Shown in pieces: positions 19,299 to 42,351 of a stretch of 64,000 nt of DNA. The stretch lies in contig JAPDFW010000101.1 in NCBI GenBank assembly GCA_028826165.1, positions 1 to 64,000 on the forward strand, in the 5' to 3' direction. Made by a program: the position numbers and the translations under genes. Position 1 is the stretch's first letter. The number at the start of each line of letters is the position of its first letter. The notes under the pieces were generated by a model. The model saw only the letters and a program-made list of their open reading frames with translations. It was not told the DNA's origin and did not search any database. The stretch is from Anaeramoeba ignava BMAN. Taxonomy: Eukaryota; Protista; Anaeramoebae.

Positions 19299-25767
<6,469 letters not shown>

Positions 25768-38815: not shown

Positions 38816-38870
38816 AGAAAAAATGATTTATTTTTTTTTCATTTTTTTCTTTTCATTTTTTTTAAAAGAA

Positions 38871-41800
38871 ATGTCAAAAAAAAATCAATCAAATTTTTAT
38901 ACAGGAATAAGTACTTGTACAAGAGATTCAGATGTAACAAATCAACCAAAAATAAAAAAGACAAGAAAAGCCAAGAAAAATATTAAAGAAAATATTAAAG
39001 AAAATATTAAAGAAAATAATAAAGAAAATAATAAAGAAAATAATAAAGAAAATAATAATGAAAATAATAAAGAAAATAACAAAGAAATTATTAATGAAAA
39101 ATTAAAAGAAAAATTTCAATATGGATTCCATAATTTAAAACTTAAACAAAATCATGAAACAAGACCAATTTGGTTAACAAATGATAGACATATTTTTCTT
39201 GAAGCATTTTCACCAGTTTATAAAGAAGCAAATGATTTTTTAATAACAATTTCTGATCCAATATCAAGACCTTATTTAATTCATGAATTCCATATCACTG
39301 CATATTCATTATATGCAGCAGTTTCTGTTGGATTGGAAACAGAAAATATTCTTGAAGTATTGGAAAAATTATCAAAAAATTATATTCCTTCTGAAGTTGC
39401 TGATTTTATTGTCAAATCAACTGAAAATTATGGAAAATTGAAATTAGTTTTGAAAAATCAAAAGTTTTTTCTTGAAACTGAATTTGAAGGTGTTTTGGAA
39501 AATTTAATGCAAGATGATGAATTGAGACAAACAGTTGTTTATCCAAAAGATGAAAATGAAAATACTGAAAATGAGCAAAATAAAAATTCTGTTGGATTTA
39601 ATCACCAAAATTTAATCAAAACATCAAGAATGAGAATTGCCAAAAAGGATATTTTTGGAAACAATTTCCAAGATGCTTTTAATCCAAAATATACTGAAAA
39701 AAACATTAATACTATTGATATAGATGAAGATGATGAGGATGATGATGATTCAATCATTAAAAATATTCGAAGTTTAGAAATCGAAACCAAAAAAGTTGAG
39801 AAAGTAAAAGAAAAATGTATTAATTTGGATTTTCCAGCTTTAGAAGAATATGATTTTCGAATTGATAATGCACCAAGTTTGAATATAAATTTGAGAGAAA
39901 CAACCCAAATTAGAAATTATCAAGAAAAATGTTTAAGTAAAATGTTTGGAAGAGGAAGAGCACGTTCAGGTAAAAAATACAATTGAATTAAGAATACCCA
40001 AAAAAATTTATATTATTCTTTTTTGATAAATAAGGAATTATTGTTCTTCCTTGTGGAGCTGGGAAATGCTTTGGATATAATACTCCAATTTTAATGTTTA
40101 ATGGGGAAATCAAAATGGTTCAAGATATTGAAATTAATGATCTTTTAATGGGAGATGATTCAAAACCAAGAAGAGTTCTTCAAACAGTTTCTGGTGAAGA
40201 ACAACTTTATAGAATTAATCAAGAAAATGGTGATTCTTATGTTGTTAATGAATCTCATATTTTATGTTTGAATTATAATGGAGTTAATGTTGATATTTCA
40301 ATGAAAGATTATTTTAGAAATTTACAAAAAGAAAAATTTAGAGGATATAAAGTTCCTGTTGATTTTGCTTTCCAAAATATTGAAGGTGTTGATCCTTATC
40401 TTTTTGGATATTTTTTCATGTTAATAAAACCTGGAATGATACAAAATGAAAAAATCAAAATCAAAATTGAAAATGAAAATTTTAGAAATCATTTCATTTC
40501 CAAATTAAAATATTCAAAAATAACTTTTATTGAAACAAATGAAGGAGATTTAATTTTGGAAATTGGGAATTTATTGTTTATTAAAGAAATTATTGAAAAT
40601 GATGGGAAAATGATAAATAAATATAAATGTAATTCAAGAAATATTCAAAAAGAAATTCTTGCAGGTATTTTAGATTGTGTTGGGAATTTAGATTCAAAAA
40701 ATCATGAATACTCAATATTTTTCAATAAAGAAAATTTAAATGAAAAAGAAAAAATGAATGATGTAATTTATATTTCTCGTTCACAAGGATATTATGTTTC
40801 AATTTTTAAGAATAAAATTACAATATCTGGGAAATTTATTGAAGATATTCCTGTTCAAAAATTAGAAATGAAAATGAAAATGAATTATAATGAAAATTTT
40901 GAAGGAAATGAAGAGAAATTAAATTTATTAACAAAAATAGAAGTTGAAAAATTAAAAGTGGATAAATATTATGGATTTTTAATTGATAGAAACCATAGAT
41001 TTTTATTAGGAGATTTTACAGTTACACATAATTCATTAGTTGGAATAGCAGCATCATGTACAATTAATAAAAGCACACTTGTTTGTTGTACATCTGGGTA
41101 AAATATTCAAATTCAAATTTCAAATTTCAATTCAAAATTTTAATATAAAATAATTTAATAAAAAAAAGAGTTGCTGTTGAACAATGGAAAAATCAATACA
41201 AACAATGGACAAATATATCAGATGATTCAATCGCTAGATTTACAGCAACAACAAAAGAATTATTCAAAACAGAAGCAGGAGTAATGATAACAACATATTC
41301 AATGATATCATTTCAAGGAAATCGCTCAGAAGATTCAAAAGAAATCATGCAAGAAATCCAAAACAAAGATTGGGGATTATTAGTATTGGATGAAGTGCAT
41401 GTTGTTCCAGCAGAAACATTTAGAAAAACAATATCAATTGCAAAATCACATGTTAAATTAGGATTAACAGCAACATTAGTAAGAGAAGATGAAAGAATAG
41501 CAGATTTGAATTTCTTGATTGGCCCAAAATTATATGAAGCAAATTGGCAAGATCTGCAAAGAAACGGATATATCGCTAAGGTTCAATGCGCAGAAGTTTG
41601 GTGTCCAATGACAACTAATTTTTTTAATGAATACTTAAAATCAGACAGTGTTCATCGTAAAATATTATTGTTTGTTATGAATCCCTCTAAGATTCAGGCT
41701 TGTGAATATTTGATAAGATATCATGAAAGTTGTGGTGATAAAATACTCATTTTTTCAGACAGTGTTTATGCTCTTCTGTTTTATTCGAAAAAACTAAATA

Positions 41801-42351
41801 AACCCAAAATTTATGGAAAAACAACTCAAAATGAAAGAATGGAAATTTTGACAAGTTTCCAAAATAACGTTAATAAATGCATTTTCATCTCAAGAGTTGG
41901 TGATAACTCAATTGATTTACCCGATGCAAATGTGATTATCCAGATATCAAGTCATTATGGTTCAAGGAGACAAGAAGCACAAAGATTGGGAAGAATTTTA
42001 AGACCAAAACCAAGTCATGATAATCCAAATGAATTTAGTGCTTTTTTTTACACTTTAGTTTCTCAAGATACTCAAGAAATGTATTATTCAACTAAAAGAC
42101 AACAATTCTTAATTGATCAAGGTTATTCTTTTAAAGTTATTTCTAATTTAATTCCTGAAGATAATTTAAAAGATTTATGTTTTTCTAAAAAAGAAGATCA
42201 AGAATATCTTCTTGAAAAAGTTTTGAAAAAAGCTGATGATAAAGAAGAAGATGAAGAAGATTTTGATGCAAAAGGTCTTCGTGAAATTAAAAAAAGAGAA
42301 AAAGCAAAAACAATTAAAAAAAGGAAAATAAATTTTAAATTTAGATTTTAA
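38871..42351 (+). CDS. XPB: TFIIH helicase/translocase XPB (ERCC3/Rad25), intein-containing
   Basis: RPIW...IFLEAFSP, TAYSLYAAVSVGL, LEEYDF, RNYQEKCLSKMFG, SGIIVLPCGAGK|SLVG, LDEVH, LGLTATLVRED, SRRQEAQRLGRILR. Introns 39970-40034 and 41098-41168. Confidence 0.96.
40067..41032 (+). mobile_element. Intein (322 aa, in frame) with LAGLIDADG-like endonuclease region, in the XPB Walker A motif
   Basis: Starts CFGYNTPILMFNGEIKMVQDI...LMGDD; block B NESH; DPYLFGYFF and ILAGILDCVG; ends YYGFLIDRNHRFLLGDFTVTHN, then Ser+1. Removal restores LPCGAGKSLVG. Confidence 0.96.

What the first reader, a model, noticed from the sequence alone, without database searches (positions are those of the whole stretch)
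40067..41032. Intact intein in the Walker A motif of nuclear TFIIH helicase XPB
Seen: a 966-nt in-frame insert splits LPCGAGK|SLVG and has all splicing residues (C1, NxxH block B, HN, S+1). Known: P-loop insertion is a classic intein site in prokaryotic and viral helicases, but inteins in nuclear transcription/NER genes are rare. Inference: an essential TFIIH subunit here matures by protein splicing.
Basis: partly seen in the sequence, partly recalled or inferred. Interest (0 to 1): 0.82.

Follow-up and report, generated by a model that had tools for sequence, protein, structure and literature searches.

The report
Known-type intein in Anaeramoeba XPB P-loop
A self-splicing protein element (intein) interrupts the ATP-binding loop of the only XPB/TFIIH helicase gene in what is almost certainly Anaeramoeba ignava, but a 2023 paper already described about 100 inteins in this organism, so it is ordinary for this genome.

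Summary
Window 40067-41032 is an uninterrupted 322-codon insert, in frame, between Lys and Ser of the Walker A motif GAGK|S of a three-exon XPB/Ssl2/Rad25 gene. Removing it restores exact collinearity with human and yeast XPB: 33 extein residues fill a 33-residue gap.

The insert is a class 1, PI-SceI/Prp8-type intein. It has Cys1, N61-x-x-H64, H321-N322 and Ser+1. It matches Pfam Hom_end_hint at E 8e-20, and its predicted fold matches PI-SceI (TM 0.72-0.77). Its LAGLIDADG endonuclease domain keeps the fold but has lost both catalytic acids. XPB is single-copy in the genome, so an intein-free paralogue is excluded.

The intein has at least 40 relatives in the same genome and thousands in metagenomes. 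Two sampled contigs look like giant viruses. Nearly all copies sit after the Walker A lysine of unrelated NTPases.

Genome features (about 80% A+T, five Hint matches clustered where Prp8 lies, at least 41 PF05203 loci) fit Anaeramoeba ignava BMAN, whose 103 inteins were published in PMC10710043. The main text does not name XPB, and Dataset S1 could not be read. No RNA evidence could be obtained. This scan already holds 72 intein notes on this genome, and one follow-up reached the same identification.

The parts
38823..39969 (+). XPB exon 1 (N-terminal domain and damage-recognition domain). The real start codon is probably the second ATG at 38871.
   Evidence: Pfam Helicase_C_3 at E 3e-30. TIGR00603 profile positions 5-277. 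Aligns to human XPB 64-335.
39970..40034 (+). Spliceosomal intron 1, 65 nt, GT..AG, phase 1.
   Evidence: Read from the sequence. GC is 15%. The split codon G|GA gives the Gly that precedes IIVLPCGAGK.
40035..40066 (+). N-extein part of exon 2: (G)IIVLPCGAGK, the Walker A motif up to its lysine.
   Evidence: The lysine is the equivalent of human Lys346 by collinearity.
40067..41032 (+). Intein, 322 aa, class 1, PI-SceI/Prp8 type (Hint domain plus a degenerate LAGLIDADG domain).
   Evidence: PF05203 at E 8e-20. PDB sequence hits to PI-SceI and Prp8 inteins. AlphaFold model with pLDDT 92.6. Foldseek to PI-SceI at E 1e-18, TM 0.72-0.77.
40067..40105 (+). Block A: C1-FGYNTPILMFNG, with Cys1 as the first nucleophile.
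   Evidence: C1 and G13 are invariant in the 42-intein alignment.
40247..40258 (+). Block B: N61-E-S-H64.
   Evidence: H64 is invariant and N61 is at least 90% conserved.
40397..40426 (+). Remnant of LAGLIDADG motif 1 (YLFGYFFMLI). No acidic residue stands where relatives have G-D.
   Evidence: most giant-virus-type relatives read ...WLGD, and no own-genome copy does.
40658..40684 (+). Remnant of LAGLIDADG motif 2 (LAGILDCVG). The catalytic Asp position is Val205.
   Evidence: Aligned to PI-SceI LAGLIDSDG, where D326 falls opposite V205. Family comparison.
40961..41032 (+). Blocks F and G: [23 protein letters not shown]321N322.
   Evidence: G303, F304, N309, R311, V319, H321 and N322 are invariant.
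41033..41097 (+). C-extein part of exon 2: S+1-LVGIAASCTINKSTLVCCTS(G). Ser+1 is both the Walker A serine and the second splicing nucleophile.
   Evidence: Collinearity with XPB.
41098..41168 (+). Spliceosomal intron 2, 71 nt, GT..AG, phase 2.
   Evidence: GC 10%.
41169..42351 (+). XPB exon 3: the rest of helicase lobe 1 (motif II, DEVH), lobe 2 and the C-terminal tail, ending in stop codon TAA.
   Evidence: PF16203 ERCC3_RAD25_C at E 3e-111. TIGR00603 at 619 bits. Yeast Rad25 415-774 at E 2e-140.

Best explanation
Window 38823-42351 (+) is the single XPB/Ssl2/Rad25 gene of a very AT-rich protist, almost certainly Anaeramoeba ignava BMAN. Its second exon carries a 322-aa class 1 intein between the Walker A lysine and serine (GAGK|S). 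The gene is transcribed, and its two short GT-AG introns are removed from the RNA. The translated precursor has a split P-loop, so it cannot bind ATP. The intein then excises itself in four steps: an N-S acyl shift at Cys1 assisted by block B His64, transesterification onto Ser+1, succinimide formation at Asn322 assisted by His321, and an O-N shift. This rejoins GAGK-S to give active XPB for TFIIH. These steps are inferred from conserved residues and the predicted fold, and were not observed. The LAGLIDADG endonuclease domain is still folded but has lost both catalytic acids, so this copy is a fixed relic that no longer homes. It belongs to a very large PI-SceI/Prp8-like intein family that sits after the Walker A lysine of many unrelated NTPases. 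The family occurs both in this genome and on metagenomic contigs, and the two contigs sampled look like giant viruses. This is the situation published for Anaeramoeba in 2023 (probably that paper's 'cluster 15').
For: The coordinates and residues were read directly. PF05203 matches at E 8e-20. PI-SceI and Prp8 inteins are the best PDB sequence hits. C1, H64, H321 and N322 are invariant across 42 family members. The model has pLDDT 92.6 and pTM 0.90, and Foldseek ranks PI-SceI first at E 1e-18 and TM 0.72-0.77. The exteins match rad25/XPB, and removing the insert leaves a 33-residue gap filled by exactly 33 extein residues. The open frame is far beyond chance at 6e-17. XPB is single-copy in the 42.8-Mb assembly. 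There are at least 40 related inteins in the genome, and most of those whose flanks were read follow GxxGxGK. There are 7543 relatives in the 1.84-billion-protein library, and nearly all of the best 150 have the same P-loop site. Two of their contigs look like Nucleocytoviricota. The endonuclease acids are lost in 0/12 own-genome copies but kept in 19/30 external copies. For genome identity, window GC is 20.3% against 80.65% A+T reported for BMAN (PMC11550330). Five Hom_end_hint matches lie within C98:194552-204331, where one intein has Prp8 flanks, against 'BMAN Prp8 has five inteins' (PMC10710043).
Against: Neither transcript nor protein was seen. Block B begins with Asn, not the commoner Thr, but this is the family norm. 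The 2023 paper's main text never names XPB, and its Dataset S1 is not held, so whether this particular intein is listed is not verified. The organism name is inferred, because the tools hide it.
Confidence: 0.9

Rival explanations
1. The insert is removed at the RNA level as an unusual intron, so no protein splicing takes place.
For: No RNA data could be obtained to exclude this directly.
Against: The insert starts TG and ends AT, not GT..AG. It is 966 nt with 21.7% GC, whereas the gene's two real introns are 65 and 71 nt with 10-15% GC. It keeps a 322-codon open frame in phase with both exteins (P about 6e-17). It also encodes a confidently folding Hint plus LAGLIDADG protein with every splicing residue.
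Confidence: 0.02
2. The gene or the intein is dead: either a pseudogenised XPB copy or a non-splicing intein, with XPB function supplied from elsewhere.
For: The endonuclease domain is degenerate. Some sister inteins in this genome carry frameshifts.
Against: No other XPB locus exists in the assembly. All three exons are open and score far above the family cut-offs. The invariant splicing residues are all kept. XPB is an essential TFIIH subunit in the eukaryotes studied (general knowledge).
Confidence: 0.03
3. The intein reached XPB by quasi-allelic homing from a giant-virus SF2 (ResIII, 'SSL2-like') helicase that carries the same intein at the homologous xPCGxGK|T site, and not by a jump from another gene within the genome.
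For: 38 of 126 full-length external relatives sit in xCGxGK|T ResIII+Helicase_C helicases. They are 38-50% identical to the XPB intein, at least as close as the best own-genome copy at 35-40%. In the tree the XPB intein lies inside a mostly external group, not in an own-genome clade. Green et al. 2018 list viral helicase inteins under KOG1123, the SSL2/XPB group. External copies keep the endonuclease acids.
Against: The tree has no well-supported branch around the XPB intein; its sister branch has SH-aLRT 84 and is not in such a helicase. The viral helicases are only remote relatives of XPB, at 58 bits or less. The P-loop microhomology GGnnnnGGnAAA| is shared by many hosts, so any P-loop copy could have been the donor.
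Confidence: 0.3
4. The intein has been co-opted as a conditional switch, for example redox-sensitive splicing that gates TFIIH activity in this anaerobe.
For: Only circumstantial. The precursor cannot bind ATP, and a conserved extein Cys lies 5 residues before Cys1.
Against: There is no evidence of conditional splicing. The same family sits in dozens of unrelated P-loops, which fits a selfish element that is hard to delete better than a regulator. The extein Cys belongs to the conserved xPCGxGK motif also seen in the viral helicase relatives.
Confidence: 0.05

Closest known systems
Anaeramoeba ignava BMAN nuclear inteins (Gallot-Lavallee et al. 2023, PNAS, PMC10710043), probably 'cluster 15'
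   Same: The genome features match: about 80% A+T, five Hint matches clustered where Prp8 lies (the paper reports five Prp8 inteins), and dozens of Hint loci. The intein type matches (Prp8/VMA-like, with viral relatives). So does the promiscuous, non-allelic distribution over many unrelated host proteins.
   Different: XPB/TFIIH is not named in the main text, and Dataset S1 could not be read. The paper stresses P-loop homing for its class 3 'cluster 1'. Here a class 1 (Cys1) family also sits almost exclusively after the Walker A lysine.
PI-SceI (S. cerevisiae VMA1 intein) and fungal Prp8 inteins
   Same: These are the best sequence and fold matches. They share block A (CF..T.VLM.DG), blocks F and G (YYG...FLL....V.HN) and the two-domain Hint plus LAGLIDADG architecture.
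   Different: The host and site differ. The two LAGLIDADG catalytic aspartates of PI-SceI (D218 and D326, from my knowledge of the literature) correspond here to no acidic residue and to Val205. The intein is 322 aa against 454.
Giant-virus (Nucleocytoviricota) helicase inteins, listed under KOG1123/KOG2548/KOG0947 in Green et al. 2018 (PMC5784728)
   Same: The intein family is the same at 38-50% identity. The insertion point is the same, after the Walker A lysine of a ResIII-type SF2 helicase with the motif xPCGxGK|. The two contigs sampled have giant-virus-like gene content.
   Different: The hosts are small viral helicases with the P-loop at about residue 120, only remotely related to XPB. 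They have Thr at +1, not Ser. Most keep the endonuclease catalytic acids.
Prokaryotic and phage P-loop inteins (for example in DnaB, RecA/RadA, terminase)
   Same: An intein inserted in the ATP-binding P-loop of an essential NTPase, so that ATPase activity depends on splicing.
   Different: They belong to different intein sequence families. This comparison rests on general knowledge and was not tested here.

Membership tests
Class 1 intein (Hint domain) | Cys, Ser or Thr as first residue | tested here: met
   Cys1 is TGC at 40067-40069. It is invariant in 42 relatives.
Class 1 intein (Hint domain) | Block B (T/N)xxH | tested here: met
   N61-E-S-H64. H64 is invariant and N61 is at least 90% conserved.
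Class 1 intein (Hint domain) | C-terminal His-Asn followed by a Ser, Thr or Cys +1 nucleophile | tested here: met
   H321-N322|S at 41027-41035.
Class 1 intein (Hint domain) | Hint fold | tested here: met
   PF05203 at 72 bits against a cut-off of 32. Model pLDDT 92.6. PI-SceI is the top fold match at TM 0.72-0.77, and Prp8 mini-inteins match at TMt 0.81-0.86.
Class 1 intein (Hint domain) | In-frame insertion whose removal restores a contiguous conserved host protein | tested here: met
   Human XPB residues 336-368 (33 aa) and yeast Rad25 residues 382-414 (33 aa) correspond to the 33 extein residues of exon 2. TIGR00603 profile positions 278-310 lie between the exon matches.
Class 1 intein (Hint domain) | Protein splicing demonstrated | not testable with these tools
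   This needs an expression and splicing assay, or proteomics.
Mobile intein with active LAGLIDADG homing endonuclease | Two LAGLIDADG motifs, each with a catalytic Asp or Glu | tested here: not met
   The fold is retained (I-DmoI and PI-SceI matches). Motif 2 reads LAGILDCVG, with Val at the PI-SceI D326 position. Motif 1 has no acidic residue. Pfam Hom_end and LAGLIDADG models do not match.
XPB/Ssl2/Rad25 TFIIH helicase (TIGR00603, PF16203) | Family profile above the curated cut-off, with the N-terminal and C-terminal XPB-specific domains | tested here: met
   Exon 3 scores 619 bits against a cut-off of 328.7, and PF16203 matches at E 3e-111. Exon 1 matches PF13625 at E 3e-30 and rad25 profile positions 5-277. 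PDB XPB and Rad25 chains match at E 1e-137 to 1e-140.
XPB/Ssl2/Rad25 TFIIH helicase (TIGR00603, PF16203) | Only copy in the genome (not a spare paralogue) | tested here: met
   A six-frame search of the whole 42.8-Mb assembly found one locus.
Published Anaeramoeba ignava BMAN intein set (PMC10710043) | The genome is A. ignava BMAN | tested here: inconclusive
   Window GC of 20.3% compares with the published 80.65% A+T (PMC11550330). Five Hint matches lie within C98:194552-204331, where one intein has Prp8 flanks, and there are at least 41 PF05203 loci. Names are hidden by the tools, so identity is inferred.
Published Anaeramoeba ignava BMAN intein set (PMC10710043) | This XPB intein is listed in Dataset S1 | not testable with these tools
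   No supplementary files are held. The main text has no XPB, ERCC3, TFIIH, RAD25 or SSL2.
Spliceosomal intron (rival) | GT..AG borders, short length and about 90% A+T as in this genome's introns | tested here: not met
   The borders are TG..AT, the length is 966 nt and GC is 21.7%, against 65 and 71 nt with GC 10-15% for the flanking introns.

The most novel reading that the evidence does not exclude
The XPB intein is absent from the published catalogue. It reached the host's TFIIH helicase from a giant-virus SSL2-like SF2 helicase that carries the same intein at the homologous xPCGxGK site. That would be a virus-to-host 'quasi-allelic' homing event driven by a virus-borne endonuclease, after which all nuclear copies lost endonuclease activity.
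Probability: 0.15. Interest if true: 0.4.

Novelty: already known. Interest (0 to 1): 0.15.

Why it matters
It matters little as a discovery. The abundance of inteins in Anaeramoeba, their presence in essential nuclear genes and P-loops, their viral relatives and their non-allelic spread were all published in 2023. This locus is a clean, well-delimited example in which an essential transcription and repair ATPase cannot bind ATP until its intein is removed.

First, the class 1 PI-SceI-like family, not only the class 3 family the paper stresses, sits almost exclusively after the Walker A lysine, both in this genome and in thousands of metagenomic proteins. Second, all 12 nuclear copies compared lack the endonuclease catalytic acids, while about two thirds of the external relatives keep them. 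This fits spread driven by a virus-borne endonuclease. Third, some proteins among the external relatives carry two such inteins three residues apart in one P-loop.

Tried and rejected
RNA evidence. The look-up of sequencing runs found a single run of unknown kind and no RNA run. No read or transcript evidence was therefore obtained. Those places were sent to no search tool afterwards, and exon 1 was searched from 39030 onwards.

Joined coding sequence.

The search for homologous proteins was not run. Its length filter would exclude both the roughly 1130-aa precursor and roughly 800-aa XPB orthologues when queried with single exons, and it is costly.

A. flamelloides orthologue (empty site or not). 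It could not be fetched with the available collections. The paper's list of eight insertion sites shared between the two species does not include XPB.

Dataset S1 of PMC10710043 is not held, so the listing could not be verified.

Phylogeny. A quick IQ-TREE run on 145 inteins gave no supported placement for the XPB intein, so the donor remains open.

XPB-hosted allelic inteins elsewhere. None of the best 150 of 7543 relatives is a true XPB (58 bits or less to exon 3). Lower-ranked hits could not be inspected.

The intron reading of the insert was rejected.
Full report
OBSERVATION. The region 38.8-42.4 kb of the window, on the + strand, holds a three-exon gene. Exon 1 runs from 38823 (more likely from the second ATG at 38871) to 39969. 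Intron 1 is 39970-40034 (65 nt, GT..AG). Exon 2 is 40035-41097. Intron 2 is 41098-41168 (71 nt, GT..AG). Exon 3 is 41169-42351 and ends in TAA. Exon 2 reads (G)IIVLPCGAGK | C-FGYNTPILMFNG ... FTVTHN | SLVGIAASCTINKSTLVCCTS(G).

The other five frames hold 17-50 stops. At the local base composition the chance of an open frame this long is about 6e-17.

THE HOST IS XPB AND THE INSERTION IS PRECISE. The exons were searched one by one by reference.

- Exon 1 matches Pfam Helicase_C_3 (E 3e-30), and exon 3 matches ERCC3_RAD25_C (E 3e-111).
- On NCBIfam TIGR00603 (rad25), exon 1 from 39030 covers profile positions 5-277. Exon 3 covers positions 311-690 and scores 619 bits against a cut-off of 328.7.
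- Against solved structures, the part of exon 1 searched ends opposite human XPB residue 335 and yeast Rad25 residue 381. Exon 3 starts opposite human 369 and yeast 415.
- In both species the gap is 33 residues. The extein residues of exon 2 number 11 + 22 = 33.
- Removing the 322 residues therefore restores an uninterrupted XPB. The insertion lies after the equivalent of human Lys346, the Walker A lysine.

A six-frame search of the whole 42.8-Mb assembly finds only this XPB locus.

THE INSERT IS AN INTEIN.

- Pfam Hom_end_hint (PF05203) matches at E 8e-20, 72 bits against a cut-off of 32.
- The best solved-structure sequence matches are PI-SceI (the yeast VMA1 intein) and the Cryptococcus Prp8 inteins. 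They align over block A and over blocks F and G.
- In an alignment with 11 relatives from the same genome and 30 from metagenomes, C1, H64, H321 and N322 are invariant and N61 is nearly so.
- An AlphaFold model built from that alignment is confident, with mean pLDDT 92.6 and pTM 0.90.
- Foldseek ranks PI-SceI chains first (E 1e-18, TM 0.72-0.77). Archaeal VMA inteins, PI-PfuI, Prp8 mini-inteins (TMt 0.81-0.86) and the free LAGLIDADG enzyme I-DmoI follow.

The protein is therefore a two-domain intein: a Hint splicing domain with an inserted LAGLIDADG-fold domain.

THE ENDONUCLEASE IS DEGENERATE. HMMER aligns LAGILDCVG of the XPB intein to LAGLIDSDG of PI-SceI. Val205 falls opposite Asp326. The first motif (YLFGYFFMLI...) has no acidic residue where relatives read ...WLGD. 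Pfam's Hom_end and LAGLIDADG models do not reach significance on it, although they do on the metagenomic relatives. That D218 and D326 are the catalytic residues of PI-SceI comes from my knowledge of the literature and is not a tool result.

By this criterion none of the 12 own-genome family members compared keeps the motif 2 acid. Among 30 external relatives, 19 do, and most of those also keep G-D in motif 1. A cruder pattern count gives about 62 of 126 external copies and 0 of 19 own-genome copies. The XPB intein therefore looks like a fixed relic that can splice but no longer homes.

WHY NOT AN INTRON. The insert begins TG and ends AT. It is 966 nt long with 21.7% GC. The two real introns of the gene are 65 and 71 nt, run GT..AG, and have 10-15% GC. 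This matches what is published for this organism, whose introns are 91.9% A+T (PMC11550330).

Direct RNA evidence could not be obtained. Only one public run, of unknown kind, holds the stretch, and none is on record as RNA.

THE FAMILY AND ITS SITES. The intein has 70 matching segments at more than 40 places in its own genome. I read the flanks of 30 fetched loci, which hold 21 distinct insertion sites.

- Seventeen of the 21 sites lie directly after the lysine of a Walker A motif in unrelated NTPases.
- Hosts include a TRIP13/PCH2-like AAA ATPase (GPSGTGK|T; the closest relative, 35-40% identity), dynein (GSSGAGK|T), RecQ-like helicases (MPTGGGK|S) and MCM proteins (GDPSxxK|S).
- They also include SMC- and ABC-type ATPases (GPNGSGK|S), Lon (GPSSVGK|S), translational GTPases (GHVDSGK|S) and an RFC-like protein (GKPGIGK|S).
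- These host names are my reading of the flanking motifs, not database hits.
- The exceptions are two P-type ATPases (DK|TGT), CDC14 (H|CKAGLGRTG) and Prp8.
- At the DNA level the P-loop sites share GGnnnnGGnAAA | (T/A)Cn.

An exhaustive HMMER search of 1.84 billion representative proteins gave 7543 hits at E 1e-3 or better and 961 at 1e-30 or better. Among the best 150, nearly all carry the same intein type after GK of a P-loop.

Of 126 full-length intein copies extracted from those 150 proteins, 38 sit in small ResIII+Helicase_C SF2 helicases with the motif xCGxGK|T at about residue 120. These helicases are only remote relatives of XPB, at 58 bits or less to exon 3, and none of the 150 is a true XPB.

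Two contigs carrying such helicases look like giant viruses. Their genes are densely packed and intron-less. They encode Rpb5 and Rpb6, TFIIS, an mRNA capping enzyme, the ribonucleotide reductase small subunit, and a D5-type primase-helicase that carries its own intein. Green et al. 2018 already list 20 helicase inteins of Phycodnaviridae and Marseilleviridae, some of them assigned to KOG1123, the SSL2/XPB orthologous group.

ORIGIN. A quick maximum-likelihood tree of 145 inteins places the XPB intein inside a large, mostly external group and not within an own-genome clade. No branch around it is well supported: its sister, a metagenomic protein with two tandem inteins, has SH-aLRT 84. Own-genome copies fall in at least 2 and up to 7 places on the tree. 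A viral-helicase donor is therefore plausible (I put it near 0.3) but not shown. Any P-loop copy could have served as donor.

WHAT GENOME THIS IS, AND WHAT IS KNOWN. The tools hide names, but several features agree.

- Window GC is 20.3%.
- The genome holds at least 41 PF05203 loci. Five of them lie within C98:194552-204331, where one intein has Prp8 flanks (...FPTWEGLFWERC|...|SGFEESMKYKKL).
- Earlier notes of this scan mention a dynein with three inteins.
- These match A. ignava BMAN as published: 80.65% A+T (PMC11550330); 103 inteins; Prp8 with five; a dynein with three; and 'cluster 15' inteins in 24 BMAN proteins and nine viral proteins (PMC10710043).
- The paper also proposes viral mediation and non-allelic spread, including to P-loops.

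Gallot-Lavallee et al. surveyed the predicted proteome systematically with BLAST and HMMs, so this strong Hint match is very likely in their Dataset S1. I could not check that, because no supplement is held and the main text names neither XPB nor TFIIH. XPB is not among the eight sites the paper lists as shared with A. flamelloides. If the intein is catalogued, it is therefore specific to BMAN.

An earlier follow-up in this scan identified the same genome from a SMARCAL1 intein. The scan holds 72 intein notes on this genome.

MECHANISM (inferred). Transcription and removal of the two spliceosomal introns yield an mRNA that still contains the intein. Translation gives a precursor of roughly 1130 aa whose P-loop is split between Lys and Ser, so it cannot bind ATP. 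Class 1 protein splicing then rejoins GAGK-S through Cys1, His64, Ser+1, and His321 with Asn322. Ser+1 is both the second nucleophile and the Walker A serine. The released intein, about 37 kDa, has no predicted nuclease activity. The residues, the fold and the collinearity are shown here. The chemistry itself was not observed.

VERDICT. I rate it 'already known', with about 20% doubt that this particular host is absent from the catalogue. In that case it would be a new member of a known kind. Interest is low.

Noticed in passing
window 21399-22516 (+), shift near 21757-21763: The related intein in the DK|TGT motif of a P-type ATPase in this window is 1118 nt, one base short of a multiple of 3. 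The frame shifts by one base in an A-run, from frame 0 (...KFVNFIKN) to frame 2 ([14 protein letters not shown]...). The paralogous copy on C55 (L012) is intact at 365 aa. This is either a homopolymer error of the long-read assembly or a real pseudogenisation.
   Followed up: partly
L002-L030 (own genome) versus P0005-P0142 (metagenomes); alignment A1: None of 12 own-genome members of this intein family keeps the LAGLIDADG motif 2 catalytic acid, while 19 of 30 external relatives do, most of them also with G-D in motif 1. The nuclear copies look like post-homing relics, and the active endonucleases appear to sit in the external, giant-virus-type copies.
   Followed up: partly
P0001, P0006, P0009, P0019, P0025, P0043 (metagenomic proteins): Several metagenomic proteins among the external relatives carry two inteins of this family three residues apart in one Walker A motif (for example ...GKPG|intein|TGK|intein|T...). 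Others carry two inteins back to back with no extein residue between them (P0002, P0003, P0008, P0041, P0126).
   Followed up: no
L003 (G000:C75:282441) and L008 (G000:C71:952559): At two own-genome sites the reading frame upstream of the intein's Cys1 closes within 0-1 codons (stop codon, AT-rich sequence ending in AG). A spliceosomal intron therefore appears to abut the intein's N-terminus inside the P-loop codons.
   Followed up: no
L005/L026 (G000:C92:283245-284248) versus L006/L015 (C35) and L007/L010 (C113): Three dynein-like loci carry the same intein at GSSGAGK|TVLS. The C35 and C113 copies are nearly identical (336 and 334 aa). The C92 copy is 1004 nt, not a multiple of 3, so it has a frameshift or an internal intron.
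   Followed up: no
L033:12988-16695 (metagenomic contig of P0005): On this giant-virus-like contig the D5-type primase-helicase, a few kb from the intein-bearing SF2 helicase, also carries a Hom_end_hint intein. The SF2 helicase itself holds a second intein of another type (Intein_splicing plus LAGLIDADG_2).
   Followed up: no
I worked beside it and sent none of its letters to any search afterwards.
   Followed up: no
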